Below, in pieces: positions 8,413 to 63,992 of a stretch of DNA of 64,000 nt. Every line of letters starts with the position of its first letter. The stretch's first letter is position 1. The stretch spans positions 186,001 through 250,000 of IMG/VR virus record IMGVR_UViG_3300044712_001255; one strand, 5' to 3'. The notes beneath the pieces are model-generated. The model made no database searches and was not told where the DNA came from. It saw only the letters and a program-made list of their open reading frames with translations. The translations under genes were made by a program, and so were the position numbers.

Positions 8413-8631
8413 ATGAAGATCAAGTTGGGCGCACTACGCAAGATCATTAGAGAAGAACTTGAGAGCGACATCCAACGAATGGCTAAGGGCGGCGTAGAGC
8501 TCAAGCGGCCGGTGACAACGCCAGAAGAAGAGCAACGTACTGTGCCTGACTGCGATGACGAAGACCTCAAGTTGGGTGATGACATTCTTCATGATGATCC
8601 TGACGTTGTACAACCTGTCAGAGGTGGGTAG
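8413..8631 (+). CDS. hypothetical protein with MKxxLxxLRxIIREE N-terminal leader
   Basis: Starts MKIKLGALRKIIREELE. Confidence 0.65.
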   Translation: MKIKLGALRKIIREELESDIQRMAKGGVELKRPVTTPEEEQRTVPDCDDEDLKLGDDILHDDPDVVQPVRGG

Positions 8632-8659
8632 ATTATCCACAACAGGAAAAGGAAACTAA

Positions 8660-8884
8660 ATGGCAAGAGAAGAGAGAGACGATCGGATTGAGTTTGAAGG
8701 CATTGTTGACGAGGTTATGCCTGGAACGATGTTTCGAGTCAAAGTCTCAGACAATCACATGGTGCTTTGTACGTTGAGCGGAAAGATGCGCCAGCACAAG
8801 ATTCGCGTTTTGCTTGGTGACAGAGTTCGTATCGAAGTTAGCCCGTATGACCTTACGCGTGGGCGTTTGTCCCGGCGTCTATGA
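8660..8884 (+). CDS. infA: translation initiation factor IF-1
   Basis: [18 protein letters not shown]...[34 protein letters not shown]; SD-like AGGAAA upstream. Confidence 0.92.
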
Positions 8885-9037
8885 GCATGTGGTCGAAATC
8901 TCGGCAGCTTGAGAGGCGAATACGAAAGTGTTCGCCTTGTCGTTGTTGGAGTTGCTCACCCATGTTGCGAAAAGAGACGTTCAACAAGAAGCGTCTGGCT
9001 TTGATGACGCCTGATAGAGAACTCGATACCTATCAAG

Positions 9038-9739
9038 GTGATACTCCTGAGAGAGTTTGTGAAGATGACGCTCGCGGAAGCCGGTGTCTCACTGAAACAG
9101 GCGACAAACCCTGACAACCCGCTTGGACTTGTCGTCAAAAATGATGGCACACAGCTCACGCTGGTGCTCTATAACCCATTTGCATTAGCAATCAAAGCAC
9201 AAAAGTGGGCGCAGGATGACATCTTTGGTGATCAAAATGAGCTGATGAAGCACGTTGTTGATCAGATCTTCATGAGCGAAAGCTTCCTTGGAGTCATCAA
9301 AGGGTACCTCACCGCCGTACCAAGCAAACAATTCCCTAGCGTTTGGGAAGTATCAGAATCATATGCCGTTGGAAAGCATGGGCCGCTTCTGTATGACATT
9401 GCCATGTCACAGCTCGGGTGGCTTACAAGCGACCATGAAGGTGATTCAAGCACAGACGCACAAGGCGTGTGGCAGTTTTATTTGAACAACAGGACAGATG
9501 TTGTTTCAAAACCGCTGGTTGCGCAACCCATATCTGCTGCTGATTATGCCTTCAAGGCGAAGCGTAAGGCAAACATCACACCATTGGTAACAGCTCATAA
9601 CAACGCAGCACAAAGTATTGCCACTGACATACGAAGTTCAAACCCACGCATAGGTGGAAACTTCAATGCAGATTTAGGTGAACTGTTGACACGTGGAGCA
9701 ATGAAACACTTTAGCGGTTATCGTCGCTCTGACTTCTGA
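9038..9739 (+). CDS. hypothetical protein, possible GNAT-like fold
   Basis: HGPLLYDIAM...SSTDAQGVWQFY resembles an acetyltransferase motif (weak); starts ILLREFVKMTLAE. Confidence 0.45.
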   Translation: MILLREFVKMTLAEAGVSLKQATNPDNPLGLVVKNDGTQLTLVLYNPFALAIKAQKWAQDDIFGDQNELMKHVVDQIFMSESFLGVIKGYLTAVPSKQFPSVWEVSESYAVGKHGPLLYDIAMSQLGWLTSDHEGDSSTDAQGVWQFYLNNRTDVVSKPLVAQPISAADYAFKAKRKANITPLVTAHNNAAQSIATDIRSSNPRIGGNFNADLGELLTRGAMKHFSGYRRSDF

Positions 9740-10004
9740 CGCCTCTGCATCATCCAGAACCCGACGTCAGCAAGTCGCTCAAAGAACCACGATACGATGC
9801 CAGGCAGCATATCGTTGACATGCAGGTAGTGCGACGCCTGTACGCTGAACCTTACGATGCTTGTACCAATCTGATTCCACATGCCAATATTGTAACCAGT
9901 GTTGGGGCAGAATACATATCTGCATGCTGACGATCCTTTTTAGAGCGATGGTTCATGCCGTCGACTCAGCCCCACACGTCGGAACAGTGAGGGCAACAGA
10001 CTCT

Positions 10005-10625
10005 ATGAAGGAACGAGTAAAGGCACAGAAGGAACGCATCCGTCGTCTGATAGCTCGAACAGCAGAGGCTCTTACCGCGGCAAAGAATCACTCTCACGGT
10101 GGAACACTATTGATGTCAACATCACAGCGTTCACGTGGCGGGCGCGCAGTCATAGACGTATACGTGGATTCAAAAGATCCGCTGAAAGACGAGCTCGTCA
10201 GCTACTTGCGTAAGAAGCTTCCCAAGGAGTTCAAGCGAGTTCACGAAGACAAGCAGGAAGAACTGCACCTTGAATCGCTATTGAGAGAGTACGTTGACAT
10301 CACGCTTCGTGGTGGAGGTGGGTGGAACTCACAAGCCCAACCAATACCGTCTGCAACGGCTCCCAAGGGCACACCGCTTGGTCTGGATATTCAACCGAAC
10401 AACTCTAAGTGGAATAAGGATGCTCTTGATGCAGATGAAGCAGGCGTAGCTGATCACTTGCAAGATCCAGACGCAGAGGATCCTGCTGGTGACACGTTTG
10501 GCCCGCTCTACTCAAAGGATCGCTACAAGACTGCACGCTGCAAAATGGACCCGGTGCCCAAGGGTGCCGTGGTGCAGGACGACCCGTTTGTTGGTGACGC
10601 TTATCCTTCGCGCCGCATTGGGTGA
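10005..10625 (+). CDS. hypothetical protein
   Basis: ORF; start placed at MKERVKAQ. Confidence 0.55.
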   Translation: MKERVKAQKERIRRLIARTAEALTAAKNHSHGGTLLMSTSQRSRGGRAVIDVYVDSKDPLKDELVSYLRKKLPKEFKRVHEDKQEELHLESLLREYVDITLRGGGGWNSQAQPIPSATAPKGTPLGLDIQPNNSKWNKDALDADEAGVADHLQDPDAEDPAGDTFGPLYSKDRYKTARCKMDPVPKGAVVQDDPFVGDAYPSRRIG

Positions 10626-10832
10626 TTAGTCGAACTCAATTACCTCAAAAACAAAATCATTTTTGATGTCATAGCGTTCAATACCCATCGATCGTCGAAG
10701 GACAACGACCTTGCGATAGTGCTCAGCATCGCTGTCGGTGTTTGCAATGACGATGCCTACCTCAAATTCATTCTTTGCAGGAATGAACACCAGCGTTCCT
10801 GGCTCGAGTTTTGAGGCAAGTTCATAGAACAT
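10626..10832 (-). CDS. 'PGD' family SH3-like protein
   Basis: KLEPGTLVF...GIVIAN. Confidence 0.6.
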   Translation of the reverse strand: MFYELASKLEPGTLVFIPAKNEFEVGIVIANTDSDAEHYRKVVVLRRSMGIERYDIKNDFVFEVIEFD

Positions 10833-11105
10833 CTACTCATAAGTAGACTCTCTGATGACTCCAAATCGTACAGCGTTGGAATCAGAATAAGAAAGATTCC
10901 AATAATCAAAGATCACATTGTTACGCAATATTGAGAGTTCAACTCGTGAGTCAAAAACTTTAACAGCAATTACAAGTGATTTGGGATATTTCGCCACAGT
11001 GCCGAGTGGCGTAGAAAATGCTACTATAACATCACCCGGGAGTGTCTTGCGATAGTCTACCCAGGTGACATTGCGATCAAAGTACAGCGATGTAATAGTC
11101 GACAT
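10833..11105 (-). CDS. 'PGD' family SH3-like protein
   Basis: TLPGDVIV...SLVIAV. Confidence 0.6.
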   Translation of the reverse strand: MSTITSLYFDRNVTWVDYRKTLPGDVIVAFSTPLGTVAKYPKSLVIAVKVFDSRVELSILRNNVIFDYWNLSYSDSNAVRFGVIRESTYE

Positions 11106-11847
11106 CGCGATTACGCTCCAGCTCTCCTGACAAGACACGCTCCTTCAACGAAGAGATAGCCTTACCCAAAGCAGGACCAGGGGCAATGCCAAACTTCTCA
11201 GAAATGACAAGTCCAAGTCCCTTGGGAAGAACGTTGCGATCGGCGTCGGCCTTCTTGATCTTTTCAATATAGGATTCAAGGTCATCAATGCGACGTTGGT
11301 GCTGCAAGAACTTCTCACGACGACCGGTGGTGACGTCTGCGCGTACAAAGCGCAAGAGAGCAGGCAGCCGAGGCCCACACTCAGTGATCAAGCGACGAAC
11401 GCCCGAATCCGACCACTCATCAACGCATTCCACGCGACCAGAATTGCGAATGAGCCATTCGATTTCCTCTGCCTGATCCTGTTCGTCATCCCACAGGTGA
11501 GTGCGCTTGGCAATAACGCGGAACATGTCAGCGCCACACGCTTCGTGGCCGTGAAAGGTCACCTCACGATTGATGATGCGAAAACATATAGGCTTACCGA
11601 TGTCGTGTAGTAGAGCAGTCCAACGCTGCGAAAGCGTCAGAGTGGTCTGAGCGACCACCTGGCGGGTGTGAGCCCACAGATCCTTGTGATGAACGCCATC
11701 GCCGAACCCAATGATGTTCATGAGCTCGGGAAAGAACAGCTTCACATCTGCCTGTTGCACGAGGTGCGTGAGTCGATCATTCGAGATAGTATGAGCGAGC
11801 AATTGAGAATCGATATATTGCTTCGTCAATGACATTGTGCTAATCAT
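11077..11847 (-). CDS. stand-alone HD phosphohydrolase resembling the C-terminal HD region of CCA-adding enzymes
   Basis: HHKDLWAHT, ALLHDIGKP, TFHGHEACGA, RADVTT; no nucleotidyltransferase head (no DxD domain). Confidence 0.8.
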   Translation of the reverse strand: MISTMSLTKQYIDSQLLAHTISNDRLTHLVQQADVKLFFPELMNIIGFGDGVHHKDLWAHTRQVVAQTTLTLSQRWTALLHDIGKPICFRIINREVTFHGHEACGADMFRVIAKRTHLWDDEQDQAEEIEWLIRNSGRVECVDEWSDSGVRRLITECGPRLPALLRFVRADVTTGRREKFLQHQRRIDDLESYIEKIKKADADRNVLPKGLGLVISEKFGIAPGPALGKAISSLKERVLSGELERNRDVDYYIAVL

Positions 11848-12028
11848 CCCAACTAGGGTTATGTGTCACGGGCTCAATGTGAAGTTCAACTGTCAACTTT
11901 GTTTTTGCGCCTTGAAGGATTTCATTTACAATTGTCCAATTCTCGGCGAGATAACTGTCATCAGTAACGATGCTCTCAAGTGTGACAGCAAGCTTCGTAG
12001 CTAACGCGACAAGTTCTTCCTTACTCAT
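11840..12028 (-). CDS. hypothetical protein
   Basis: SD AGGAGG upstream; overlaps HD gene start. Confidence 0.55.
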   Translation of the reverse strand: MSKEELVALATKLAVTLESIVTDDSYLAENWTIVNEILQGAKTKLTVELHIEPVTHNPSWDD

Positions 12029-12085
12029 ATGACAATACCTCCTGTCGGCGCGATCTGCACCGACACAATGATAGATATCGAAAAA

Positions 12086-12433
12086 TCAACCAACGATTTG
12101 ATTGATCAGCGTATCTAACGCATGTCTCACGCGACAGAGGTCAACAACGTCAACTCGCCGCAAGTATGATTTTGAAATGGGCCATTGAATTCCTTCAACG
12201 TTGTCGTATGCTGGCATGAGGTCAGTTGCCTCAACGCACCATACCATTTCACCTTCAATTTTGTCAACTCTATAAAGAGTCTTAGAGATCATCCCAGACA
12301 TTTCAGCATAGGCTACAATATCACCAACGTTTATCCTTGGGATGAGTCCTGTGGTGACTAGCATACGTCCACCCGTAGATTGTAGAGGTCCTGTGGCCCC
12401 CATGGGTCCAAATGTAATTGTGTTTGACATCAC
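12086..12433 (-). CDS. SH3-like protein with C-terminal 'DLCxxRxxLD' helix (paralog 1 of 3)
   Basis: INVGDIVAY...LYRVDK...VDVVDLCRVRHALDTLIN. Confidence 0.65.
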   Translation of the reverse strand: MMSNTITFGPMGATGPLQSTGGRMLVTTGLIPRINVGDIVAYAEMSGMISKTLYRVDKIEGEMVWCVEATDLMPAYDNVEGIQWPISKSYLRRVDVVDLCRVRHALDTLINQIVG

Positions 12434-12717
12434 GTGCCTTGCACACCGTCTTCGTCATCTTTGGCGATCGAATCGACTTCGGCGTTAATGAATAGATCAA
12501 TCTTTAGGCGTGCCGCCGCGAGGTCAGTCAAGACAACTGGCCGCATGTAACACGCTTGGAAACGTTTCTTGCGCCCTCTTGGCCCATCAAGATTTCCCCA
12601 CAACGATATCACAGGTTCTACGAGAAAATAGCTTGGATCTTTGTACGTTTCCACCACACGATACACAAAATCATGATGATCTACGTGCGTACACAACGAT
12701 CCAATCTTATACATCAA
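12430..12717 (-). CDS. SH3-like protein (paralog 2 of 3)
   Basis: YKIGSLC...VYRVVE...VVLTDLAAARLKIDLFIN. Confidence 0.65.
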   Translation of the reverse strand: MMYKIGSLCTHVDHHDFVYRVVETYKDPSYFLVEPVISLWGNLDGPRGRKKRFQACYMRPVVLTDLAAARLKIDLFINAEVDSIAKDDEDGVQGT

Positions 12718-12965
12718 TTGCTCTTTTCGTTTTTGTTTGCTGAGAACACTCTCACATTTTCAATGTTCAATAGAATACGGCACCCAATGCACTCTTTCTG
12801 AGTTATGAACACTTCTTGCAGATCGTGATGATCTATGATGGGTAGTCCACATGCTGGACACCGCACCTCAATTGTGCCTGCCGCATGGCACTTTATGATG
12901 TCATTCACGGTGTCACGGACGGTGTCACTCAGTTCCTGTTGCTTCTTCTTGTGCTTCATTGCCAT
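12714..12965 (-). CDS. small zinc-ribbon protein
   Basis: CPAC...CIGC. Confidence 0.6.
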   Translation of the reverse strand: MAMKHKKKQQELSDTVRDTVNDIIKCHAAGTIEVRCPACGLPIIDHHDLQEVFITQKECIGCRILLNIENVRVFSANKNEKSN

Positions 12966-13416
12966 CTGCAGCTCCTGTGCACGATTCTACAACGTCTGAA
13001 ACGAGCTGATCAATGAGCGTGCGGAGTTTGCAAAGGTCTACGATGTCAATCCGCATCAACCTACAAGAGTCGTAAGTTGTGCGACCACGATCACGTGCTG
13101 CCCTGTTGGGAACAGGAGATAATAACACAAGTGGCTTCACTTGCGTACGCCATATTGGTGATCCAGCGACTGGCGTCTTCGTTGTTTTGTACCGCGTGCG
13201 TCCTGTTTTTGGGTCTTTGTATGATCTCGACCAATTCGTCTTGGTTCGAAAACGTATCTTGCCTGGCTCTTCGTGCTTTTCAACCCTGTAGATCGTATTA
13301 GCCGCTGATCCGGTGGCGCCAACAACATAGACATATGATCCCACCGGAAATGCATTTTCTGGCGTGTCTTCAATCGTCTTGAATCTTGTCCTTAATTCCT
13401 TGAGAGTGCGTGCCAT
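12925..13416 (-). CDS. SH3-like protein (paralog 3 of 3)
   Basis: FPVGSYVY...IYRVEK...IDIVDLCKLRTLIDQLVS. Confidence 0.65.
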   Translation of the reverse strand: MARTLKELRTRFKTIEDTPENAFPVGSYVYVVGATGSAANTIYRVEKHEEPGKIRFRTKTNWSRSYKDPKTGRTRYKTTKTPVAGSPIWRTQVKPLVLLSPVPNRAARDRGRTTYDSCRLMRIDIVDLCKLRTLIDQLVSDVVESCTGAADGNEAQEEATGTE

Positions 13417-13447
13417 ACTAACATTTTACGCACCGGGAACGCAATTT

Positions 13448-13690
13448 TCAACTCGCAAGACGCTCTATGATTGCAAACCATTCATAGGCAAGGATTATCT
13501 CATCAGATGCTTCGCCCGTGGGCAGGAGCAATTTTATGCGTACAGCAGTATCGTATCTCCTGCTATTTTTCTTCACCTCGATAACGATACCAGTGCGTTG
13601 CGACAAGAACGTCAATGGAACGTTGGTCTCGGACCGCCACGCAAGCACGTAGTCACCGGGTACGATTTCGCATGTCTGTACTTGTTCCAT
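13448..13690 (-). CDS. 'PGD' array paralog
   Basis: EIVPGDYVL...GIVIEV. Confidence 0.7.
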   Translation of the reverse strand: MEQVQTCEIVPGDYVLAWRSETNVPLTFLSQRTGIVIEVKKNSRRYDTAVRIKLLLPTGEASDEIILAYEWFAIIERLAS

Positions 13691-13732
13691 TTAGAACATC
13701 CTAACTCGTGTGTCACGATGCTACACAAATAA

Positions 13733-13981
13733 TTACGTCTTCACAGATACAGAAGCCCCCACAGGCACCTCAAGATTTAACACGTAGTCGTCTTGCAGCA
13801 CCTGAAGCTTTATGACATGAGGATTGTCGCTTGAGCAGACGGGACCACTTACGATGACGCCCCAGTTCCAACGGAAGTAGGTGACGCGGAGGCCGTTTGT
13901 CGTCTTCCACTCCCAATCTCCAAGAACTTCGTCTCCTTCAAGCAGATCTTTGACGTTTCTACGAACGCTGTTGGCTGACAC
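13733..13981 (-). CDS. 'PGD' array paralog
   Basis: DLLEGDEVL...GVIVSG; SD GGAGGAG. Confidence 0.65.
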   Translation of the reverse strand: MSANSVRRNVKDLLEGDEVLGDWEWKTTNGLRVTYFRWNWGVIVSGPVCSSDNPHVIKLQVLQDDYVLNLEVPVGASVSVKT

Positions 13982-14028
13982 TTCACGGCCCTCCTCCCGT
14001 TGATAGGTAGGCTGTGAATCAATGTCGT

Positions 14029-14304
14029 TTATCTCTCGTAGATTCTAAATGGACATTTGTATGAGTAGAAACGTGTGTGTACGCTATTTGACGTATCAAG
14101 TGTGGTTATGTCGATCCATTTCATACCATCAACATTTTCTTCTGTCAAGATGCTGATGACCATTTGTGGTCCACTTTGCACGAGTAACGCGTCACCAGGA
14201 TGTTCAGAGTCGATGAAATATCCGACAACGACATCACCCGGTATCAAATCACATGCCGAGATGTCGATTGTATTTTCACTCGTTTGAGTACACTTCATAT
14301 TCAA
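14029..14304 (-). CDS. 'PGD' array paralog
   Basis: DLIPGDVVV...MVISI. Confidence 0.7.
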   Translation of the reverse strand: MNMKCTQTSENTIDISACDLIPGDVVVGYFIDSEHPGDALLVQSGPQMVISILTEENVDGMKWIDITTLDTSNSVHTRFYSYKCPFRIYER

Positions 14305-14506
14305 GAATTACTGAGCAGGTGATGACAATCACATTTGACTTCAAAAGTAATTTGACACGATTAAATTTCCAGTTTTCTTCACGGCCTATCACGAGCGCGT
14401 TCTTGAACGCCTCTTGCTTGCCATCTTCGCCAGTTACAGCATAGCGTACATTACCCGTCAACAAATCGCCAGGACTAAAATCATAAGCATATTTCCACTC
14501 AATCAT
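14276..14506 (-). CDS. 'PGD' array paralog
   Basis: DFSPGDLLTG...ALVIG. Confidence 0.7.
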   Translation of the reverse strand: MIEWKYAYDFSPGDLLTGNVRYAVTGEDGKQEAFKNALVIGREENWKFNRVKLLLKSNVIVITCSVILEYEVYSNE

Positions 14507-32395: not shown

Positions 32396-33613
32396 ATGGC
32401 AAAGACTACGCTATCAATCACCAACTTCCTAAACTGCGCCAAGCTGCTGCCGGCGTTCGTATCAATATTGATTCGCGCAGACCATGGCGTTGGGAAAAGT
32501 GACCTGACGAGAGAACTTGGTGAGTTCTTCAGGAATCGCGACTTCGATGGTAAGGGTTTTCCCGTCATCGACCGGCGACTCTCTCAGCTCACTGAGGGTG
32601 ACATGGTGGGTCTTCCCAGCACCGACGGCGAGGTCACCCGCTTCAATCCTCCCGATTGGGTGAAGCGTGCGTGCCTTGAGCCGTGTATGTTGTTCCTTGA
32701 CGAGATCAACCGCGCTACCCCTGAGGTGATGCAGGCTGCATTCCAGTTGGTGCTCGACCGTGAGCTCAATGGGTGGAAGCTGCATCCGCAGACTCGGGTG
32801 TTTGCTGCCGTCAACACCGGTGCGAGCTACACGGTGAACGAAATGGACCCGGCGCTGTTGGACCGTTTCTGGGCAATCGACCTGAAGCCCACCGTTGAGG
32901 AGTGGCTTGCATGGGCTCGGAAGCGCGAAGACATCCCCGAGATGATCGTGGACTTCATCCAGGCGAATGAGCGTCACCTCGACCCTCCCGTTGACTATGA
33001 GCTCGGTAGCAATACGTCGTCTCGTCGTTCGTGGCACCGCCTCGGCCGTGCTCATATCGAGGCAAAGGTGGATGACAAGCCCGATGATCCGATCTTCTTC
33101 CACATGTCCCTTGGCTTCGTAGGTCTGGAGTCTGCAACTGCATACGTGGACTTTGCCAAGCACTATGATGCCCAGGTCTCTGGCACTGAGATCCTCAACA
33201 AGTTCGCCAAGAAGCTGCACAAGGATTTCAAGCCAGGTGACATCGGTACCCCCGATGACAAGACTGTGTACACTCCCAAGGTCCTGAAGCGCCTGGAGCG
33301 CATGGGCCAGGAGCGTTTGGTGGGCCTGATCGAAAAGGTTGCTGACGCTATCCGCACTGAGTGTGCCGGGAAGGGTCTCACCCCCGAACAGGGTGCATCG
33401 GTTGGCAAGTTTGCCACGCTGCTCCCAGCAGAACTGCGAGTTGCACTGTGGTCCAAGGTCACTGACAACGAGCTGAATGACATGAAGCTCAACAAGGACG
33501 TGCACAGGTACATCGCGCCGTTTATCATGAAATCGTTTGGAGTTCCCATGGGCCGCGCAGGTGTCGGCGTAGCGCCCAACATTCCAGATGCTTTCAAACC
33601 TGGTAACAAGTGA
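32396..33613 (+). CDS. MoxR-like AAA+ ATPase
   Basis: HGVGKS Walker A, LFLDEINRA Walker B, FAAVN, MDPALLDRF, SRRSW. Confidence 0.85.
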   Translation: MAKTTLSITNFLNCAKLLPAFVSILIRADHGVGKSDLTRELGEFFRNRDFDGKGFPVIDRRLSQLTEGDMVGLPSTDGEVTRFNPPDWVKRACLEPCMLFLDEINRATPEVMQAAFQLVLDRELNGWKLHPQTRVFAAVNTGASYTVNEMDPALLDRFWAIDLKPTVEEWLAWARKREDIPEMIVDFIQANERHLDPPVDYELGSNTSSRRSWHRLGRAHIEAKVDDKPDDPIFFHMSLGFVGLESATAYVDFAKHYDAQVSGTEILNKFAKKLHKDFKPGDIGTPDDKTVYTPKVLKRLERMGQERLVGLIEKVADAIRTECAGKGLTPEQGASVGKFATLLPAELRVALWSKVTDNELNDMKLNKDVHRYIAPFIMKSFGVPMGRAGVGVAPNIPDAFKPGNK

Positions 33614-37532: not shown

Positions 37533-37916
37533 ATGGCAAGTCAACTGATCAAGGTCATCTTTTCAGACTCCACCACGTTCTTCCTCTCACCCAATGCGCC
37601 GGCACGGCGGTTCACCTCCGAGGCCGGGTGGGAGTACGGTACCATTCAGGAACGCATCTTCATCAAGGATGACTTCCAGGTGTGGAACGGCGAGGACTGG
37701 GTTCCTGCCCGCCGTACACCCGCGAAGACTAAGGTGCGGCGCAAGTTTGCGGTTGAGGTGGAGTTCGATGTGGACGGTGATCCCACTGACGAGGACGATG
37801 AGGATGTTCGCCTCAAGATTCAAGGAATTGAGATGTCAATGGTTGACGCCATTTCTGGCTGCGCTGATGACAACAAACTGACAGTGCTCACCATGGACCA
37901 CGGTCCCGCTCTGTGA
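37533..37916 (+). CDS. hypothetical protein (leaderless)
   Basis: TATACT-aaagacc-ATG. Confidence 0.7.
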   Translation: MASQLIKVIFSDSTTFFLSPNAPARRFTSEAGWEYGTIQERIFIKDDFQVWNGEDWVPARRTPAKTKVRRKFAVEVEFDVDGDPTDEDDEDVRLKIQGIEMSMVDAISGCADDNKLTVLTMDHGPAL

Positions 37917-46383: not shown

Positions 46384-46731
46384 ATGAAGGTACGTCTTGG
46401 TGAGCTTCGACAGGTGATTCGCAATGTTGTTTCTGAGGGTGCTGAGGTAAACTTGCCTCCTGGCACTGTTTCAGGTCCAGGTGAACGTGGCGGGTGGACC
46501 GTTGAGCTGCGAGGTTTTGCAGTGACAAAGCCGACTCAGGAAGAAGCAGAAGCTGCATTCGCACAGCACTGGCCAATGATGGCAGAGTACTTCCCAGAGC
46601 CTGCACCTCGCAAACCGGTTGCGCCCGCAGGTAGTGCAAAGCCTTACAATCCAACAGCAGGATGGTCCGAAGAGGATTTCGTCCGCGGTGGTCCAGAGAA
46701 TACCAGAGCAGGCCGTGGGTTAGGGTCCTGA
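46384..46731 (+). CDS. hypothetical protein with MKxxLxELRxxIR leader
   Basis: MKVRLGELRQVIRNVVSE; CACCTATTTA 8 nt upstream. Confidence 0.65.
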   Translation: MKVRLGELRQVIRNVVSEGAEVNLPPGTVSGPGERGGWTVELRGFAVTKPTQEEAEAAFAQHWPMMAEYFPEPAPRKPVAPAGSAKPYNPTAGWSEEDFVRGGPENTRAGRGLGS

Positions 46732-57179: not shown

Positions 57180-57193
57180 GGTATAACAAGACC

Positions 57194-57523: not shown

Positions 57524-57578
57524 CTGTGAAGATATGATCTTCCAAGGTTATACTCTTCTTAGATACGGAAACAAACAT

Positions 57579-57793: not shown

Positions 57794-57832
57794 CTGAGTG
57801 ACAACAGACCTCCACTGAGGTACAACTGGACC

Positions 57833-58075: not shown

Positions 58076-58113
58076 TCGGTGATCCCAACAACTCACAAGG
58101 GTATAACAAGACC

Positions 58114-58323
58114 ATGGAAAACATCTACGCGGTAACTCATATTGATTACGAGGGTACCTACTCCGTCAAGGTCTACCGCTCCGTGGTTGACGCCTTTACC
58201 AGCTTCGCTGCCATCAAACTCTACGGCAATTGATCTTTCAAGCAGCTGGTCGGTCCCTGCACCTTCGGCGAGGATGTTACTTCCTCCACCAACGTCATCC
58301 GTCAGGAGTTCAACGAGGGGTGA
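58114..58323 (+). pseudogene. leaderless gene interrupted by an in-frame TGA at 58231
   Basis: Frame continues 29 biased codons (SFKQLVGPCTFGED...) to the next TGA. Confidence 0.5.
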
Positions 58324-58336
58324 TACCTACACAGGG

Positions 58337-58550
58337 AGGGCCCCCTATCCACGTCGAAGAGTGGCACGGTGAAGGGGCCCCATGGCCCCCTGGCTACGTC
58401 GAAGAATGTGGCTAAAAGGGCCCCGTGGCAGCCCCCTTCGATAGCCCCCTAAGAGCCCCCATGTAGCCCCCTTCGTGAAGGGGGCCCCCGGCCCCCTGCT
58501 TAAACCTTTGTGGGGCCTCCCCGTGCAGCTGCCCCGCGCTTAGCCCATAC
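58337..58550. repeat. GC-rich C5/G5 run repeat region
   Basis: AGCCCCC at 58430, 58443, 58454, 58465 plus GGGGCCCCC palindromes. Confidence 0.7.
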
Positions 58551-58671
58551 GCAAATCCCGGGAAAATTTCTCAAATCCCACTCAGCCATTCTTGACGCTG
58601 CGTCTGCTATTCCACAACACCCCCCGCACAAAATTTCCCACGGGAATTTCTCACACCTATTTACTCATACC

Positions 58672-58977
58672 ATGAAGATCACTGTAAAGCAATTTAGACA
58701 ATTGATTCGAGAAGCAACGGATTCAGGTGACGATTGGTCGGGTGGGCCGTGGATCGTTGCTATGCATAATCAATATGAGGGCCTCAGTGAAATCACCTAT
58801 TTTGCAACAGGCGACGTGGCACAAAAAGAATTCAATTCACGAAAAAAGCCACAATACACTGTTGTAGCATATAGACTCACTAACGGCATGGTTTTAGATG
58901 ATTCCTCTAAATCTAAACCGACGCATGTTGCCGACGGAAGCAACGAGTTCGAAGAAGTTAACGTCGGGTGGGAATGA
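58672..58977 (+). CDS. hypothetical protein with MKITxxQxRxLIRE leader
   Basis: MKITVKQFRQLIREA; CACCTATTTA 8 nt upstream. Confidence 0.65.
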   Translation: MKITVKQFRQLIREATDSGDDWSGGPWIVAMHNQYEGLSEITYFATGDVAQKEFNSRKKPQYTVVAYRLTNGMVLDDSSKSKPTHVADGSNEFEEVNVGWE

Positions 58978-59018
58978 CGCTTGTGTAACCCGTATGGGTC
59001 TGGTGTATACTAAGACCC

Positions 59019-59606
59019 ATGAGCAACGCCCCTACATTCATGCCGCCAATCAAGTTCTGTGGTGCTGATCGACTTGAAACACTCCCAACACATGGTTTAC
59101 ATAGCTATGTCTATAGTTTCAATGGTGATCTGCCGTATCTTACGTTCAAAGATGTTCATACCTGTATAAGGGTGACACATTGTCCCGACGTGGAGTGCTC
59201 CACTTGGGACGTGAGTTATGGTGGAACTCACATCACTGTCAACAGCGAAGATGAACTTCGATTTGCGATGTTCACTTTGCGAGACGCGATGGTTGACACA
59301 TTCTGGTCTATTGCAAAAACACTTTCAAAGAATCTTGCTCGAACTGAGAGCGTTACAAGAAAATTGCAAGATGCTGATGACTCTGCGTACGTTGCAGACA
59401 AGCCTGTTCACACTCTAACGCTGCAGCTGAAATGGACGGGAGACATTTCTCCTGAAACCGCAGAAGACTGCATCATCAGTTATGTAGAGGGCGAGCATCC
59501 GGGCGCTCCCACTCATGGCCCGTTCACTGTTACCGAAGTGAACGTTGTGGAACAACATCATCACATTGATGACGATGAGACCATTGATTACATGCACAAC
59601 CGCTGA
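59019..59606 (+). CDS. hypothetical protein (leaderless)
   Basis: TATACT-aagaccc-ATG. Confidence 0.65.
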   Translation: MSNAPTFMPPIKFCGADRLETLPTHGLHSYVYSFNGDLPYLTFKDVHTCIRVTHCPDVECSTWDVSYGGTHITVNSEDELRFAMFTLRDAMVDTFWSIAKTLSKNLARTESVTRKLQDADDSAYVADKPVHTLTLQLKWTGDISPETAEDCIISYVEGEHPGAPTHGPFTVTEVNVVEQHHHIDDDETIDYMHNR

Positions 59607-59687
59607 CAGGTGTCACTCGACCCACTTGCAATTATTCGAGGTGTCCCGATGTGGGTTCCATTTTTCTTTTGCAAGAATATTTCGTGA

Positions 59688-60662
59688 TCAATAATTCTCG
59701 TTTGGGAGATCGAATAGACCCGGGTCTGAGATGACGACTGTGCCGTCGTGACGTGCCATTACGTTGCAACGTCGCACGTCCGAGAATTTCACATTGTTTT
59801 TCTTGAACCAGATAAGTGCTTTTTGTAGCTCTTGTACTGTTGGATCTAGGCCCGCTGGATCTACATTTGCCGGATCATCATATGATTCTTCTGGCAGTTT
59901 CTTGGAGCGGGAATTAAATTGGCGTCTTTTGATCCAATCATCTGCGAAATTGGCTCGTTCTGTGTCCGTTGCTCGGAACTGCAACATGTCAATGATTTCT
60001 TGTGGCATTGAACGCGTGTCATGTACGTCCATGAATTGCACAATGTTGCCCGGGCCGCGATTGAGGCGATTTCGCTTGAGGCCGTCTAACATCCAATTGT
60101 AAAGCAAGTCAACGTCTTTTGGCGTTAGGTCTGGCATGTTTGTGGTGATGAGTTCTTCGCCCTCGTGGTACCACAATGCCGCATCGCGATGCGATGTTTC
60201 TTGCTGATCAAAGCCACCTATGCCTGCTGCTTGGCCCCTGTGAAGTGGGACGAGTCGCTCTGTCACCACGGCAACCCACCTATTCTCTGCCCGATCAAGC
60301 GGCCCACGGCCCTCGACTTCCATGTCTAATGAAATGATGTCGAGCACTCTGATCATGTGAGTTGCGACTTCTGGCGGCGCCGATTTGCGTATTTCTTCCC
60401 ACTTGGTGTATTGTCGCGCCTCTGAGGGCGAGGTCACCTTGGCCACGCACGGCTTCCCTTTGTAGTTCACTTTGAACACTGCCGAGAATGAACCGTTACC
60501 CAAGAATGCCGATCCGAGCGATCCCCTGTCGACTGGTGGGATTCCTGCTCTGCGGAGCGCGTCCATAGCACCTGTGATCCATTCATCTTGGTCTTCACTT
60601 GATTCTGTTAGCACATTTCGTATGAACGTTCGTAGCTCGCTGATTGTGGGCTTCAATAGCAT
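59688..60662 (-). CDS. protein kinase-like (ePK/ELK fold) protein with the shared N-terminal leader
   Basis: LGNGSFSAVFKV Gly loop, CVAKV Lys, SDVRRCNVM catalytic loop, ISDPGL (DFG-like); starts MLLKPTISELRTFIRNVLTE. Confidence 0.75.
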   Translation of the reverse strand: MLLKPTISELRTFIRNVLTESSEDQDEWITGAMDALRRAGIPPVDRGSLGSAFLGNGSFSAVFKVNYKGKPCVAKVTSPSEARQYTKWEEIRKSAPPEVATHMIRVLDIISLDMEVEGRGPLDRAENRWVAVVTERLVPLHRGQAAGIGGFDQQETSHRDAALWYHEGEELITTNMPDLTPKDVDLLYNWMLDGLKRNRLNRGPGNIVQFMDVHDTRSMPQEIIDMLQFRATDTERANFADDWIKRRQFNSRSKKLPEESYDDPANVDPAGLDPTVQELQKALIWFKKNNVKFSDVRRCNVMARHDGTVVISDPGLFDLPNENY

Positions 60663-60796
60663 TCGACTAAATAGCGAGCTGGCGATATATTGTTTTGGTG
60701 CCTTCTGTTGAGGAATCGATGTTGTTTTGTCGCGCCGCGGCGCAAAAAGCCCATCTGTGTGCAACCGTGCGTGTGACTCCGGTGTGAGTGTAGAAC

Positions 60797-61171
60797 TTGG
60801 CGTGGGGGGGTTACGATGGGCCTATGATGAAAGGTTATTGTGTTGCAATGCCGTATCAAGCGATCCCGTGGCGACAGTGGAGAATGTTATCGAATCGAAT
60901 AAGGGCATATGTCGGTGTCGAGTGCGTATTTTTCGATAGCCTAACGAAGTCTGAGATCATTGACAAGATTGTCGAAGAGGTGCCACGTTTCCACTTCGAG
61001 TTCTTTCACAAGAAACCGAAGAAGTGGTACAAGATTCCACGCAAGCTCGCTCGTGATACGTTCGATCGCCTGATAAAGACTGGACACGTGTGGAAAGATG
61101 AGTGCGGATTTTTTCTGACGAGGCGTGGTGAGGAACACTTGCACCGCGTATTGAAGGCGTGTTGCCCGTGA
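60797..61171 (+). CDS. hypothetical protein
   Basis: ORF; start uncertain. Confidence 0.5.
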   Translation: MAWGGYDGPMMKGYCVAMPYQAIPWRQWRMLSNRIRAYVGVECVFFDSLTKSEIIDKIVEEVPRFHFEFFHKKPKKWYKIPRKLARDTFDRLIKTGHVWKDECGFFLTRRGEEHLHRVLKACCP

Positions 61172-61491
61172 GTTCAGAGATGCGTGGTTGGGCGTGCGTT
61201 TCCAGCGATTCAGTGCTTGGTTCTTCGCTCTATAGAAAGCGTATTGGTGAGCACATCGACCTCTACGCCCTAGATGCTGGCACAACTGTGCCAGAGGAAC
61301 AGCGCTTTTCTTTTTGGGCTTTTGTGATGAGTCATAGGGGAGAATATCCAAATCCTATGATGATCGTTGAACCTACGTATGCGCCAACGTTGATCACTGC
61401 ACGAGACAGTGTGATTGCATGCGCCATTGAGTGGTTCTCTGCACGTAACAACGAGATCATTGAATCACTTCATGCGCCTAATATGAATTGA
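61159..61491 (+). CDS. hypothetical protein
   Basis: ORF overlapping upstream stop. Confidence 0.5.
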   Translation: MLPVSSEMRGWACVSSDSVLGSSLYRKRIGEHIDLYALDAGTTVPEEQRFSFWAFVMSHRGEYPNPMMIVEPTYAPTLITARDSVIACAIEWFSARNNEIIESLHAPNMN

Positions 61492-61502
61492 TAAGTAGTT
61501 CT

Positions 61503-61850
61503 ATGAAAATTTCAATTGGTCAACTGCGTGGGTTCATTAATGAGACTTTGACGTCACAAGATGATGCGCTTCAGCAACGCATGCGTCAGCGATATTCTGC
61601 GTCTATTGCTGCTCGACTGTTTGATGAAATTAATGATTTTGGTGCTGATTCTGATAGACAAGAAGTCTTTCGGGATAGGGCTGGTGACATGTTCGGTAGG
61701 CATCTAGACCCACGTGATGTTGATCAGATCGTAGCTCACATGGAACGCATTTCTGATGGAGATATGTCAACACGACGTGAATCTTGCAATATGTTGGCAG
61801 ACGACATCGTGTCTCGCATGTATGCGCCCGACGTTCCAATTTACTTCTGA
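61503..61850 (+). CDS. hypothetical protein with MKISIGQLRxFINE leader
   Basis: N-terminal motif shared with 8413, 46384, 58672, 63816. Confidence 0.65.
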   Translation: MKISIGQLRGFINETLTSQDDALQQRMRQRYSASIAARLFDEINDFGADSDRQEVFRDRAGDMFGRHLDPRDVDQIVAHMERISDGDMSTRRESCNMLADDIVSRMYAPDVPIYF

Positions 61851-61917
61851 CGTGTGCAAAACGTAGCCCTCAGTGGTATGATGTTCTCTGTAATGTCAGA
61901 CCCTGAGGGTTGTTTGC

Positions 61918-62766
61918 ATGTCTAATGAAGCAAAGCTTATTGAAAAAATTCACAAAGTAATTGCAAATCGTGGTAGAGATCGAGTAAGCACATCATCGAT
62001 TGACGATATGTTGCTGCTTGGAAACACGACAATTAACACCGTATATCACGAGTCGTTGAGCAATTATCGCTATCATTACATGTCTGACGAAGATCAACCT
62101 GATGCTTTGGGACACGTGCCTGTTTATTCGGCGAGATACAAGCGATCATTTGATACTTCTCCTGATTCACGATCGTTGCGTTGGCCTCGATTCAACCCAA
62201 ATCGCCTTGATACAAAGGACGGGTGGCGAAAGATTGAGAGGTCGTACGTTCGAGCAACGCAAATTTCCCACCGTACGTGGAATAAATTGGGCGAAACGCT
62301 CCTACAAACAATAGAAGAATGTTCACTCGCGGTTGTCAATAACGTGTATGTGTTGTTCAGAGAAGATGACGAGATATCAGCCATTGTTTTTGAGTTTACC
62401 AAAGATGGTAAACTTCGATCGTTTGCGAATGTCACGAATAAGTCAGAGCTAGATTACACAAATCCTGGTATTGCGATCATTCATGAACAATTCTCGGCGA
62501 CGATAATCTCTGCGTTCCGCCAAAACAGAAACGCGCAAAGACGTTACGAACTCATGCGGTTTGTTCTGATGCGTTGGGCGTTCCCCAAATACCACGCAAA
62601 AGAAGAATTTGAGGTCATTGACGCGCCTGGATCTGTCGTTACGACCATTATCGCACGAGCTACACCTGATTGTCCATTTGACAGGGCATATGTGATGCAA
62701 GGCAGCTCGCAAGAGGTGCATTTTCCTGCGTTTTGGCCATACGGAAGTTTGAACACGATTGAGTGA
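61918..62766 (+). CDS. hypothetical protein (282 aa)
   Basis: Long ORF; TATGAT upstream. Confidence 0.65.
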   Translation: MSNEAKLIEKIHKVIANRGRDRVSTSSIDDMLLLGNTTINTVYHESLSNYRYHYMSDEDQPDALGHVPVYSARYKRSFDTSPDSRSLRWPRFNPNRLDTKDGWRKIERSYVRATQISHRTWNKLGETLLQTIEECSLAVVNNVYVLFREDDEISAIVFEFTKDGKLRSFANVTNKSELDYTNPGIAIIHEQFSATIISAFRQNRNAQRRYELMRFVLMRWAFPKYHAKEEFEVIDAPGSVVTTIIARATPDCPFDRAYVMQGSSQEVHFPAFWPYGSLNTIE

Positions 62767-62945
62767 TGTGTAGAAAAATCTTCTACATATTAGGATGATT
62801 GTATGTTGAATCCAAATCTTGTGTTGTTGATGCTTACGTTCGCGCTTGCCGGGTTTCTTATCGGCGGTACGACGGGCGCTGTGAGTGGTGCTCTTGTTGT
62901 TTGCATATTGGGACTTATTGCAAACTTTATTGACGTCTTTCGTCG

Positions 62946-63284
62946 ATGATGCGTATGAGAACATTTTCAACTCTAACGTTCAAGCGAATCGTAACGCGAT
63001 CAAAGACGCATGAAGAAACGTGGTGCGCTCACGTTGGTACGAATCGTCTGTACTTGAAACGTACTCGTAGCAAATTGTTTCCAGGTGATACGTGGTCTCT
63101 TGAGGCTTGGGGTCGAGGCCACAATAGATTCGGCCTTGGTGATACGTGGATCGTTTACGATGATGGTGATTTTGACATCATTGATCATCACAGACAGTGC
63201 AGTGATGCGCAAGATCCTGATGTTTGGTTGGCACGTGATCCTGACGTGCTAATTGCTTTCTGGTTGAAGATACACGGAAGATGA
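62946..63284 (+). CDS. hypothetical protein
   Basis: ORF, ATGA overlap with next. Confidence 0.5.
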   Translation: MMRMRTFSTLTFKRIVTRSKTHEETWCAHVGTNRLYLKRTRSKLFPGDTWSLEAWGRGHNRFGLGDTWIVYDDGDFDIIDHHRQCSDAQDPDVWLARDPDVLIAFWLKIHGR

Positions 63285-63808
63285 TCGATCAATCAAATTG
63301 GGCAAATACGCTTGAAAAGCTTGTGGGCGAAGAAGCGTCATTGTCAAATTGGGCGGCGTTTTTGTGGCGTAAACGGAAGCATACCCAAGTCAAAAAGATG
63401 CACGTAATTCATCTAAAGCATGAAGAACATAAAAATGCTTTTCGCCCTGGCGATGTTCTTCAGAACGTATACCGCCGCAGTGAGAAGGTGCGTGTTCAAT
63501 CATACGACGCAAAACGCGAACGTTATGATGTGGTGTATTGCGACTCAGGAACTTGTGGCTTTTACTCTGCGAGAAAACTTGAAGATGAATACACAAAAGT
63601 TTCATCTACGTTACAGACACGTCAGGAAAATTTGAATCTATTGCCAGGTATGATGTACAAGAACGTAAAAACTGGCGCATACATTTTCGTAGAAACAAAA
63701 CCAGATGCGAACATGAGAGTACTTGTGAACACTGATAATGGACATCGTACAATGAGCGTTGATGAATTTTGTGATGGTGACTGGCGTCGTGTTGATTTGC
63801 CTTATTAG
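63281..63808 (+). CDS. protein with two tandem 'PG(D/M)' SH3-like modules
   Basis: FRPGDVLQNV and LLPGMMYKNV. Confidence 0.6.
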   Translation: MIDQSNWANTLEKLVGEEASLSNWAAFLWRKRKHTQVKKMHVIHLKHEEHKNAFRPGDVLQNVYRRSEKVRVQSYDAKRERYDVVYCDSGTCGFYSARKLEDEYTKVSSTLQTRQENLNLLPGMMYKNVKTGAYIFVETKPDANMRVLVNTDNGHRTMSVDEFCDGDWRRVDLPY

Positions 63809-63815
63809 TTAAACA

Positions 63816-63992
63816 ATGAGAATTACGCTCGGTGAGTTGAAGGCGCTTATTCATGAGGCGGCATCGAATGATCGTGGTAAGTGTCAAAAGTGTGGCAAAA
63901 TTGTGATGTTGACCGACGACGGGTTAATTGATCAACACGACGATTGTCGTGGGGCTGGCGTAAAACCTGTTTCGACGGCACCACTTACGTAG
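63816..63992 (+). CDS. 58-aa protein with MRITLGELKALIHE leader and Cys cluster
   Basis: Leader followed by CQKC...HDDC. Confidence 0.6.
   Translation: MRITLGELKALIHEAASNDRGKCQKCGKIVMLTDDGLIDQHDDCRGAGVKPVSTAPLT

What the first reader, a model, noticed from the sequence alone, without database searches (positions are those of the whole stretch)
8413..63992. Shared N-terminal 'MK(I/V)xLxELRxxIRE' leader on unrelated proteins, with a CTATTTA upstream motif
Seen: MKIKLGALRKIIREE (8413), ILLREFVKMTLAE (9038), MKVRLGELRQVIRNVVSE (46384), MKITVKQFRQLIRE (58672), MLLKPTISELRTFIRNVLTE (kinase, 60662 minus), MKISIGQLRGFINE (61503) and MRITLGELKALIHE (63816). The bodies after the leader are unrelated. 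Three have CTATTTA 5-8 nt upstream instead of the TATACT tile. Established: T4 internal proteins carry a short N-terminal capsid-targeting sequence removed by the prohead protease after (I/L)xE. Inference: a late-expressed head-packaging signal delivering a cargo set, including a kinase, into the virion for injection.
Basis: partly seen in the sequence, partly recalled or inferred. Interest (0 to 1): 0.66.

Follow-up and report, generated by a model that had tools for sequence, protein, structure and literature searches.

The report
Capsid-targeting leader on phage cargo proteins
A large uncultivated T4-like soil phage puts the same 14-20-residue N-terminal tag, ending in a prohead-protease cleavage motif, on a dozen or more unrelated proteins (two are kinase-like), most likely to load them into the head as T4 does with its internal proteins.

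Summary
All seven N-termini lie where stated, and three have CTATTTA 5-8 nt before the ATG. A position matrix over the whole 324-kb genome finds 12 strong members, all at N-termini, with no hits in reversed frames. Looser copies occur on prohead-core proteins. The protein bodies are unrelated. Conservation is at the amino-acid level, not the codon level.

The genome is a distant T4-type phage from a rhizosphere metagenome. It encodes a gp21-family prohead protease and a gp23-type capsid protein. The capsid protein keeps an L-x-E site at the position where T4 gp23 is cut. Every strong leader ends in [ILVM]-x-E at residue 14-20.

The leader (consensus MKITxSQLRKIIREE) recurs on 65 distinct ORFs in related IMG/VR phages, 18 of them in one 211-kb relative. 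It also resembles the N-terminus of the capsid protein itself.

CTATTTA belongs to a wider TA(T/G)TTA element that sits where other genes carry a TATACT promoter tile. Its link to leader genes is significant, and it is replicated in a second genome.

Best reading: a T4-style capsid-targeting propeptide of a new sequence type. Packaging, cleavage, late timing and injection remain untested.

The parts
8413..8631 (+). Leader protein A, 72 aa, MKIKLGALRKIIRE|E; predicted mature part is acidic (pI 4.2)
   Evidence: (36.8 bits)
8392..8398 (+). ACCTATT, 14 nt before the ATG of A; a partial copy of the upstream motif
9038..9739 (+). Leader protein N, 233 aa, GTG start (in-frame ATC at 9032 would give IKVILLREFVKMTLAE|A); truncated or variant leader; the L011 orthologue has the full leader
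46384..46731 (+). Leader protein G, 115 aa, MKVRLGELRQVIRNVVSE|G
   Evidence: 32.4 bits
46369..46375 (+). CTATTTA, 8 nt before the ATG of G
58672..58977 (+). Leader protein C, 101 aa, MKITVKQFRQLIRE|A
   Evidence: 35.4 bits
58657..58663 (+). CTATTTA, 8 nt before the ATG of C
59688..60662 (-). Leader protein I, 324 aa, MLLKPTISELRTFIRNVLTE|S, followed by a protein-kinase-like domain (G-loop about 53-58, K70, D295, N300, D313)
   Evidence: orthologues with the leader in G001 and G005
60668..60674 (-). CTATTTA on the minus strand, 5 nt before the ATG of I
61503..61850 (+). Leader protein E, 115 aa, MKISIGQLRGFINE|T
   Evidence: 33.8 bits
63816..63992 (+). Leader protein F, 58 aa, MRITLGELKALIHE|A
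   Evidence: 33.3 bits
63806..63812 (+). TAGTTAA, 3 nt before the ATG of F; the G-variant of the same upstream element

Best explanation
The shared N-terminus is a capsid- (prohead-core-) targeting propeptide of a T4-type phage.

Proposed steps, all inferred except where noted:
1. The leader forms a short amphipathic helix: M-K-I-x-h-x-x-L-R-x-h-I-(R/K)-E, often extended as E-h-x-x-L-x-E.
2. The helix docks the protein onto the scaffolding core while the prohead assembles. The capsid protein and the core proteins of this phage carry the same kind of N-terminal helix.
3. Once the shell is closed, the gp21-family prohead protease cuts after the Glu of the terminal [ILVM]-x-E, at residue 14-20. 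This frees the body inside the head.
4. Bodies that stay, such as the two kinase-like enzymes, would enter the host with the DNA. Small acidic ones may instead be expendable core filler.
5. The upstream TA(T/G)TTA element (CTATTTA is one form) is most likely a -10-type promoter of a separate temporal class, probably late. It sits 4-8 nt from the ATG, so these mRNAs would be leaderless.

Shown by sequence: the motif, its N-terminal position, its conservation across the clade, the protease and capsid homologies, the cleavage-type ending, and the DNA-motif association.

Inferred: binding to the core, cleavage, timing and injection.
For: 1. The motif is real and N-terminal. There are 12 strong members in the genome and 0 reversed-frame hits. 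In relatives, 76 forward hits stand against 4 reversed, almost all 1-2 codons after a start. G002, a 211-kb fragment from a relative, has 18 N-terminal leader ORFs. Across the clade there are 65 distinct ORFs; position 13 is E in 56 of them and position 11 is I or V in all 65.

2. Selection acts on the peptide. Bodies are unrelated and codons differ where residues agree.

3. The machinery is present. PF03420 hits at E = 3.7e-26. The protease is 33% identical to T4 gp21 and keeps GELDHP and GISSRG. PF07068 gp23 hits at E = 3.5e-59.

4. Cleavage specificity looks T4-like. The capsid protein's GQVLLE|S aligns with T4's GSFLTE|AEIGG, and V-L-x-E|S is kept in about 80 relatives. All 12 strong leaders have [ILVM]-x-E ending at residue 14-20, against 19% of other proteins.

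5. Leader-like N-termini occur on the proteins expected in the core: the gene right after the protease/deformylase pair (MKVTKEWLKGLIKE, conserved as MxITKxxLKxIVKECLVEIL in relatives), the next gene (NMLRKLILQE), and the capsid protein (MKxFTLxQLAxGIKE).

6. T4 precedent, read from the T4 record: IPIII MKTYQEFIAE|A, Alt MELITE|, gp24 MAKINELLRE|S. From the literature: 10-19-residue CTS propeptides target diverse proteins to the core and are removed by gp21 after Glu (PMC9026906, PMC5694885, PMC3012670, PMC9958956).

7. Orthologues keep the leader while the body diverges: the kinase in G001 and G005 and protein N in L011.

8. The DNA motif is linked to leader genes (p = 1.7e-5 to 8e-7). The link is replicated in G002 (10/18 vs 27/300, p = 3e-6). 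The motif sits in the same place as the TATACT tile of neighbouring genes. It also precedes some structural genes at 27-36 nt with a Shine-Dalgarno-like sequence.
Against: No proteomic, N-terminomic or transcript data exist. The phage is known only from a rhizosphere metagenome, and no RNA runs hold it.

The leader is not alignable to the T4 CTS; the two share only a pattern.

Predicted mature small proteins are acidic (pI 4.2-5.9), unlike T4's basic DNA-associated internal proteins.

No gp55, gp33 or gp45 homologue was found by tblastn, so a T4-type late transcription apparatus is not shown. Enrichment of the DNA motif in the structural module is modest (4/32 vs 8/386, p = 0.009).

The E at matrix position 13 is partly built into how members were selected.
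Confidence: 0.7

Rival explanations
1. The leader marks expendable prohead-core or scaffold components. They would be loaded and then chopped and expelled like T4 gp22, gp67 and gp68, so little or nothing is delivered to the host.
For: The small members are acidic after the predicted cut, like T4 gp67/gp68. Several members carry the motif more than once: protein L has three copies in its first 70 residues, protein S has two, and the 596-aa scaffold-like protein has an internal NMLRRELRRMRAINE. The two clearest core genes next to the protease carry the motif.
Against: Members include folded enzymes that make little sense as filler: two kinase-like proteins and a PAP2 phosphatase in G002. Bodies are highly diverse and turn over between relatives, as T4's injected internal proteins do.
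Confidence: 0.15
2. The leader is a shared N-terminal interaction helix unrelated to the capsid. It could be a tag for a common host or phage partner (chaperonin, RNA polymerase, membrane or pole localisation) or an N-degron that times turnover.
For: The peptide is an amphipathic, charged helix of the kind used in many protein-protein contacts. The phage encodes its own GroEL. No direct evidence places these proteins in the head.
Against: This does not explain why the capsid protein and the core proteins beside the protease carry the same motif. It does not explain why the motif always ends in the T4-type [ILV]-x-E, or why it is strictly N-terminal.
Confidence: 0.1
3. The conserved start reflects a nucleic-acid constraint, such as translation initiation on leaderless mRNAs or a promoter-proximal element, or recent duplication of a 5' gene segment. 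In that case it is not a peptide function.
For: The promoter-like motif abuts the ATG, so the first codons are close to the transcription start.
Against: Third-codon-position identity is 0.30 against 0.70 at second positions, and identical residues use different codons in 66% of cases. Conservation runs to residue 14-20. The 13 TATACT-tile genes in the window, which would be equally leaderless, have unrelated N-termini.
Confidence: 0.03

Closest known systems
Capsid-targeting sequence (CTS) of phage T4 internal proteins IPI, IPII, IPIII and Alt (Mullaney and Black 1996; reviewed in PMC9026906, PMC9958956)
   Same: Both are short N-terminal propeptides on otherwise unrelated proteins. Both start M-K, have hydrophobic residues spaced i, i+3, and end in (I/L)-x-E. 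Both phages encode a gp21-family protease. The cargo set is hypervariable between relatives, and an enzyme is among the cargo (Alt in T4, kinase-like proteins here).
   Different: There is no alignable sequence similarity. This leader is 14-20 residues against 10 for IPIII, about one helical turn longer, with a conserved L-R and I-(R/K)-E. There are many more carriers: at least 12-20 per genome against about 4 in T4. The mature small proteins are acidic rather than basic. The same motif is also on the capsid protein's N-terminus. The genes carry their own promoter-like element 4-8 nt from the ATG.
N-terminal propeptides of T4 gp24 (MAKINELLRE|S) and gp23
   Same: gp24's 10-residue propeptide has the same pattern as this leader (K-I-x-E-L-L-R-E). 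Here too, the capsid protein starts with a leader-like helix and has a T4-homologous L-x-E maturation site.
   Different: In T4 these propeptides are not described as a transferable tag shared with the internal proteins. Here one consensus spans shell, core and cargo proteins.
Propeptides of ejection and inner-body proteins of phiKZ-like giant phages (phiKZ, 201phi2-1, SPN3US; PMC5694885)
   Same: Many head-internal proteins are processed after Glu at a short motif by a gp21-related protease. The SPN3US paralogues gp53 and gp54 share an identical 15-residue N-terminus while their bodies have diverged.
   Different: That protease family is S80, with an (S/A/G)-x-E motif. The propeptides there are long and not one common tag. 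The phage here has a T4-type (S77) protease and a T4-type capsid protein.

Membership tests
T4-type CTS-bearing head-internal proteins | Short propeptide (10-19 aa) at the extreme N-terminus | tested here: met
   The core motif starts 1-3 codons after the start codon in 59 of 65 clade ORFs and in all 12 strong members of this genome.
T4-type CTS-bearing head-internal proteins | Propeptide ends in the gp21 cleavage motif, hydrophobic-x-Glu | tested here: met
   12 of 12 strong leaders have [ILVM]-x-E ending at residue 14-20, against 19% of other proteins. Position 13 is E in 56 of 65 clade ORFs. This is sequence only; cleavage was not observed.
T4-type CTS-bearing head-internal proteins | Phage encodes a gp21-family (S77) prohead protease and a capsid protein processed at L-x-E | tested here: met
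   PF03420 E = 3.7e-26. The protease is 33% identical to T4 gp21 with GELDHP and GISSRG. The capsid protein's VLLE|S aligns with T4's FLTE|A and is conserved in relatives.
T4-type CTS-bearing head-internal proteins | Same tag on otherwise unrelated, fast-evolving bodies | tested here: met
   No body-to-body hit better than E = 0.06. No close relatives were found for two of them in IMG/VR, nor for the kinase in the 5.8-billion protein set.
T4-type CTS-bearing head-internal proteins | Sequence homology to the T4 CTS (MKTYQEFIAE) | tested here: not met
   Read side by side, they share only a pattern (M-K start, spaced hydrophobics, I-x-E end). This leader is longer and has a different consensus, so it is an analogue or a very distant variant, not the same sequence family.
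T4-type CTS-bearing head-internal proteins | Protein is found in proheads or virions with the propeptide removed, and the tag suffices to package a foreign protein | not testable with these tools
   The phage is uncultivated and from a metagenome. The complex prediction of protease with leader gave no answer.
T4-type CTS-bearing head-internal proteins | Late expression together with the head genes | tested here: inconclusive
   The TA(T/G)TTA element is linked to leader genes and precedes some structural genes. There are no RNA data, and no gp55 or gp33 homologue was found by tblastn.
Protein kinase-like fold (Hanks-type), for the ORFs at window 59688-60662(-) and genome 250990-251769(-) | Gly-rich loop, beta3 Lys, catalytic D-x-x-x-x-N, and D-x-G | tested here: met
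   In the 4-sequence alignment, G47, K70, D295, N300, D313 and G315 are invariant. The profile hits Ser/Thr kinases in PDB (best E = 3.8e-5), covering both the G-loop/Lys and the catalytic loop/DFG. All top Foldseek hits are kinases, although the model is poor (pLDDT 46, TM about 0.2).
Protein kinase-like fold (Hanks-type), for the ORFs at window 59688-60662(-) and genome 250990-251769(-) | Passes Pfam's curated Pkinase threshold | tested here: not met
   PF00069 scores E = 0.018 and 14.9 bits, against a cut-off of 31.7. This is a divergent kinase-like protein, and its activity is unknown.

The most novel reading that the evidence does not exclude
A large clade of uncultivated T4-type jumbo phages from soil and water may run a modular virion-loading system. 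Any gene would become head cargo by gaining a roughly 45-nt cassette: a -10-type late promoter abutting the ATG (giving a leaderless mRNA) plus a 14-20-residue tag that mimics the capsid protein's own N-terminal helix. With it each phage would load 12-20 different proteins. These include Ser/Thr-kinase-like enzymes and a PAP2 phosphatase, which would be injected to rewire host signalling before any phage gene is transcribed.
Probability: 0.35. Interest if true: 0.7.

Novelty: new variant of a known kind. Interest (0 to 1): 0.58.

Why it matters
If the tag works as a capsid-targeting sequence, it gives a sequence-only way to list the head-internal, possibly injected, proteins of a whole clade of uncultivated jumbo phages. 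Such proteins are otherwise invisible without virion proteomics. They are prime candidates for anti-defence and host-takeover functions.

It would extend the T4 CTS principle to distant relatives that use a different consensus. It would also suggest that the tag imitates the capsid protein's own N-terminus, which bears on the open question of what the CTS binds in the scaffolding core.

It would point to packaged kinase-like and phosphatase enzymes as a kind of cargo. It would also offer a second, longer targeting tag for phage-based protein delivery.

A practical point: the public gene call for the kinase starts 32 residues too late, so automated annotation hides the tag.

Tried and rejected
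- Megablast of 32 kb of the window against 50,697 phage records found no match.
- Single-protein searches of IMG/VR with the kinase and with the 115-aa protein at 46384 found no relatives.
- The word search of 5.8 billion proteins with the kinase returned only the protein itself.
- Pfam and PHROGs on the leader proteins were mostly empty. The exceptions were a SOD C-terminal domain and weak kinase hits.
- A single-sequence AlphaFold model of the kinase was unusable (pLDDT 36). With 4 sequences only the N-lobe was modelled.
- Complex prediction of the protease (residues 40-232) with the first 40 residues of protein A gave 'no answer' (score 0.00). This is no evidence either way.
- tblastn with T4 gp55, gp33, gp45, gp22, gp67, gp68 and Alt against the genome found nothing significant.
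- tblastn of a 30-residue leader against cultured phages found no match.
- In the 41-kb head region of Microcystis phage Mel-JY01 there was no strict leader. It has only similar h-h-(K/R)-E endings on head-protein N-termini.
- The sequencing-run search found two DNA runs from rhizosphere metagenomes and no RNA.
- The large profile search (search of protein representatives) was not spent, because the PDB profile search had already settled the kinase question.
- A weak gp23-like hit at genome 185435-185548 lies in a small paralogous ORF and was judged not relevant.
- Caution on statistics: the 'loose' leaders P-T were noticed through the DNA motif. Only the 'strict versus other' tests are unbiased.


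Full report
WHAT THE WINDOW IS

The window is bases 186001-250000 of a single 324,468-bp IMG/VR virus record. The record is linear, CheckV estimates it 86% complete, and its GC is 46.6%. The DNA occurs in rhizosphere metagenomes. It has no near relative among 50,697 deposited phage genomes.

The genome is a distant member of the T4 superfamily. It encodes:
- a gp20-like portal;
- a gp21-family prohead protease (PF03420, E = 3.7e-26; 33% identity to T4 gp21, with the GELDHP His motif and the GISSRG Ser motif);
- a 635-aa gp23-type major capsid protein (PF07068, E = 3.5e-59);
- two roughly 1000-aa proteins that I take to be tail sheath from their N-terminal sequences alone (not checked against any family).

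The closest named capsid proteins are only 37-52% identical: Microcystis phage Mel-JY01, a 484-kb 'huge phage', and Flavobacterium phage immuto. IMG/VR, however, holds at least 598 contigs with capsid proteins related to this one; the 80 best are 62-80% identical.

THE OBSERVATION

I built a 13-column matrix from nine leaders and ran it over all six frames of the genome.
- The nine seeds score 30-37 bits.
- New, non-seed hits of 16-20 bits are again N-terminal: genome 257209, 141444, 73459 and 41606.
- No hit of 12 bits or more occurs in reversed translations.

This gives 12 strong members. Six more lie outside, at genome 282695, 119524, 251769(-), 257209, 141444 and 73459. Eight members sit within 25 kb (genome 232-257 kb).

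With the first 22 residues removed, the bodies show no pairwise similarity better than E = 0.06. Where two leaders share a residue they share the codon in only 34% of cases. Identity is 0.70 at second codon positions and 0.30 at third. Selection therefore acts on the peptide, and the copies are old.

The ORF at 9038 starts at GTG and lacks the first four residues of the consensus. An in-frame ATC two codons upstream would give IKVILLREF. Its orthologue in contig L011 begins with the full leader, MKISVCNLRILVNMLSE. It is therefore a true member.

CONSERVATION ELSEWHERE

In the 1.06 Mb of flanks around the capsid gene of 80 related contigs, the matrix finds 76 forward hits against 4 reversed. 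Nearly all lie 1-2 codons after a start codon. I fetched two relatives whole.
- G002 is a 211-kb fragment whose capsid protein is 70% identical. It has 18 N-terminal leader ORFs and no reversed hits.
- G001 is a 140-kb fragment and has 3.

Over 65 distinct non-core ORFs the consensus is M-K-I-T-(L/V/E/I)-(S/G)-Q-L-R-K-I-I-R-E-E-(V/I/L)-x-x-L-x-E. L7 occurs in 60 of 65, R/K8 in 64, I/V11 in 65 and E13 in 56. Positions 14-20 were not used for selection, yet they continue the helix and often supply a second L-x-E.

Bodies in G002 include a PAP2-family phosphatase (E = 3e-7, above Pfam's cut-off).

WHY A CAPSID-TARGETING PROPEPTIDE IS THE BEST READING

First, the ending. All 12 strong leaders have [ILVM]-x-E ending at residue 14-20, against 19% of the other predicted proteins. 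T4 gp21 cuts after Glu in such motifs. Reading the T4 record gives IPIII MKTYQEFIAE|A, IPI ...ITE|A, Alt MELITE|, gp24 MAKINELLRE|S and gp23 ...FLTE|AEIGG. The literature reports ITE-6 and LTE-619 for Alt (PMC5694885).

Second, the protease's specificity looks conserved. BLAST aligns this capsid protein's GQVLLE|S with T4's GSFLTE|A. V-L-x-E|(S/A) is kept in the roughly 80 relatives.

Third, proteins that must be in the prohead carry the same kind of N-terminus.
- The 152-aa gene right after the protease and a deformylase gene starts MKVTKEWLKGLIKE. In relatives it is conserved as M-x-I-T-K-x-x-L-K-x-I-V-K-E-C-L-V-E-I-L.
- The next gene, 89 aa, starts with NMLRKLILQE.
- The 596-aa scaffold-like protein has an internal NMLRRELRRMRAINE.
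- The capsid protein itself begins M-K-x-F-T-L-x-Q-L-A-x-G-I-K-E. This is an extension ahead of the part that aligns with the N-terminus of T4 gp23.

Fourth, orthologues keep the tag while bodies drift. The kinase-like protein's orthologues in G001 and G005 start MDNSLVRHYILSVLLE|E and MSSLRALIRAVLLE|D.

This is the logic described for T4: 10-19-residue CTS propeptides give unrelated proteins affinity for the scaffolding core and are removed by gp21. In the T4 CTS, hydrophobic residues 4 and 7 serve targeting, and residues 8 and 10 serve processing (PMC9026906; also PMC3012670, PMC9958956). Here the corresponding positions would be L5/L8 and I12/E14, one helical turn longer.

THE DNA MOTIF

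CTATTTA lies 8, 8 and 5 nt before three of the ATGs. The genome has only 11 copies. By my own base-composition estimate, roughly 50 would be expected. Five of the 11 lie within 28 nt upstream of leader or leader-like genes.

CTATTTA is one form of a broader element, TA(T/G)TTA(A/C/G). ATAGTTA is the most enriched 7-mer upstream of genes, with 11 of its 17 copies there. The broader element lies within 16 nt of 5 of 12 strong leader genes against 4 of 418 other genes (p = 8e-7). Members that I noticed through the DNA motif itself are left out of that test.

The link is replicated in G002. TA-N-TTA lies within 20 nt upstream of 10 of 18 leader ORFs against 27 of 300 other ORFs (p = 3e-6). There it typically reads (G)TATA(T/G)TTA-N5-6-ATG.

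The ATG falls 6-7 nt after the hexamer. It occurs on 13 genes between window 37533 and 59019, with one more at 64403, just past the window's end. None of them has the peptide leader.

The two elements therefore occupy the same place relative to the ATG. This argues that TA(T/G)TTA is also a -10-type promoter element and that both classes give leaderless or nearly leaderless mRNAs.

That the TA(T/G)TTA class is late is only suggested. The element also precedes a sheath-like gene, a core gene and other genes of the structural module at 27-36 nt, with a Shine-Dalgarno-like sequence between. In the 40 nt upstream it is found for 4 of 32 module genes against 8 of 386 elsewhere (p = 0.009). It resembles T4's TATAAATA in having no -35 partner. 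No gp55 or gp33 homologue was detected, and no RNA data exist.

THE 'KINASE'

Pfam is below threshold (Pkinase E = 0.018). An alignment of the protein with two orthologues and the second leader protein at genome 251769(-) has these residues invariant: G47, K70, D295, N300, D313 and G315.

A profile built from that alignment hits Ser/Thr kinases in PDB. The best is STE20-like kinase at E = 3.8e-5, and it matches both the G-loop/Lys region and the catalytic-loop/DFG region. A 4-sequence AlphaFold model is poor overall (pLDDT 46) but models the N-lobe at 65-79. All of its top Foldseek matches are protein kinases or pseudokinases.

So two leader proteins are protein-kinase-like with catalytic residues in place. 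Their activity and substrates are unknown.

CAVEATS AND RIVALS

Nothing here shows packaging, cleavage or injection. The predicted mature small proteins are acidic (pI 4.2-5.9), unlike T4's basic internal proteins. Some members carry several copies of the motif. Part of the set may therefore be expendable core components, like T4 gp67 and gp68 (rival 1).

A capsid-unrelated interaction tag (rival 2) does not explain the motif on capsid and core proteins, nor the invariant cleavage-type ending. A nucleic-acid constraint or recent duplication (rival 3) is contradicted by the codon analysis and by the TATACT-tile genes. The protease-leader complex prediction gave no answer and is not counted as evidence.

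VERDICT

It is lower for late timing (about 0.55) and for injection of the cargo (about 0.4).

It works like the T4 CTS but is not the same sequence family: a new variant of a known kind.

No alternative genetic code was used.

Noticed in passing
window 37520-59019 (ATGs at 37533, 38268, 40263, 40773, 43068, 43720, 46860, 48339, 48724, 48944, 55506, 56232, 59019; one more at 64403, just past the window's end): The 'TATACT tile' is a complete promoter-like unit: TGTGAC-like box, about 17 nt, GG-TATACT, (a/g)AGACC, then ATG 6-7 nt after the hexamer. It repeats gene by gene. This geometry predicts leaderless mRNAs for a whole block of small genes in the 55%-GC part of the window.
   Followed up: partly
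window 8660-8884 (+): A phage-encoded translation initiation factor IF-1 homologue (PF01176, E = 1.6e-20) lies between two leader genes. It may relate to the apparently leaderless mRNAs.
   Followed up: partly
genome 41124-41609 (+), outside the window (L001:2062-2547): A peptide deformylase gene (PF01327, E = 1.7e-39) sits inside the head-morphogenesis cluster, between the prohead protease and the first leader-like core protein. Its stop overlaps that protein's ATG.
   Followed up: partly
window 59688-60662 (-): The public gene call for the kinase-like protein (P0001, 292 aa) starts 32 residues downstream and drops the leader. Longest-ORF calls at 8215, 58510 and 60764 overshoot in the other direction. 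Automated annotation therefore hides the shared N-terminus.
   Followed up: no
genome 145113-145838 (+), outside the window (L100): A Fe/Mn superoxide-dismutase-like protein (Sod_Fe_C, E = 1.2e-19) has an N-terminal extension of about 45 residues containing LQKIVSE. TAGTTAA lies 10 nt before its ATG. It is a possible loose member of the leader set.
   Followed up: partly
window 265-1215, 1579-3159, 5882-6961, 32396-33613: Auxiliary genes: UvdE UV endonuclease, a GroEL-type chaperonin (PHROG E = 1e-144), an SPFH/Band-7 protein and an AAA_5 ATPase.
   Followed up: no
window 10626-31000 (- strand) and genome 185216-186242: A long run of tandem ORFs of about 65-110 aa on the minus strand, in a lower-GC (43-45%) block. 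Several share a pattern like G-D-x-V-x(10-20)-G-x-V/I-x-x-V-x(8-12)-W and look like a paralogous family. A weak gp23-Pfam hit at genome 185435-185548 falls in one of them and is probably spurious.
   Followed up: no
genome 73459-74064 and 256763-257209, outside the window: Two proteins carry the leader motif more than once. The first has three copies in its first 70 residues. The second has two LRxxIxDEAKK copies about 85 residues apart. This suggests multiple protease sites, as in T4 scaffold proteins.
   Followed up: no
G002 (L124:12743-13393, - strand): A 217-aa leader protein in the relative has, by eye, an R / S-x-W-T / E-x-E pattern reminiscent of ADP-ribosyltransferases such as T4 Alt. 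Pfam found nothing, so this is only a lead.
   Followed up: partly
genome 44829-46736 and 67355-73441, outside the window: The capsid protein is 635 aa against 521 in T4, with an insertion between the two Pfam-matched parts. There are two adjacent paralogues of about 1000 aa whose N-termini look like tail sheath by eye (not checked against any family).
   Followed up: no
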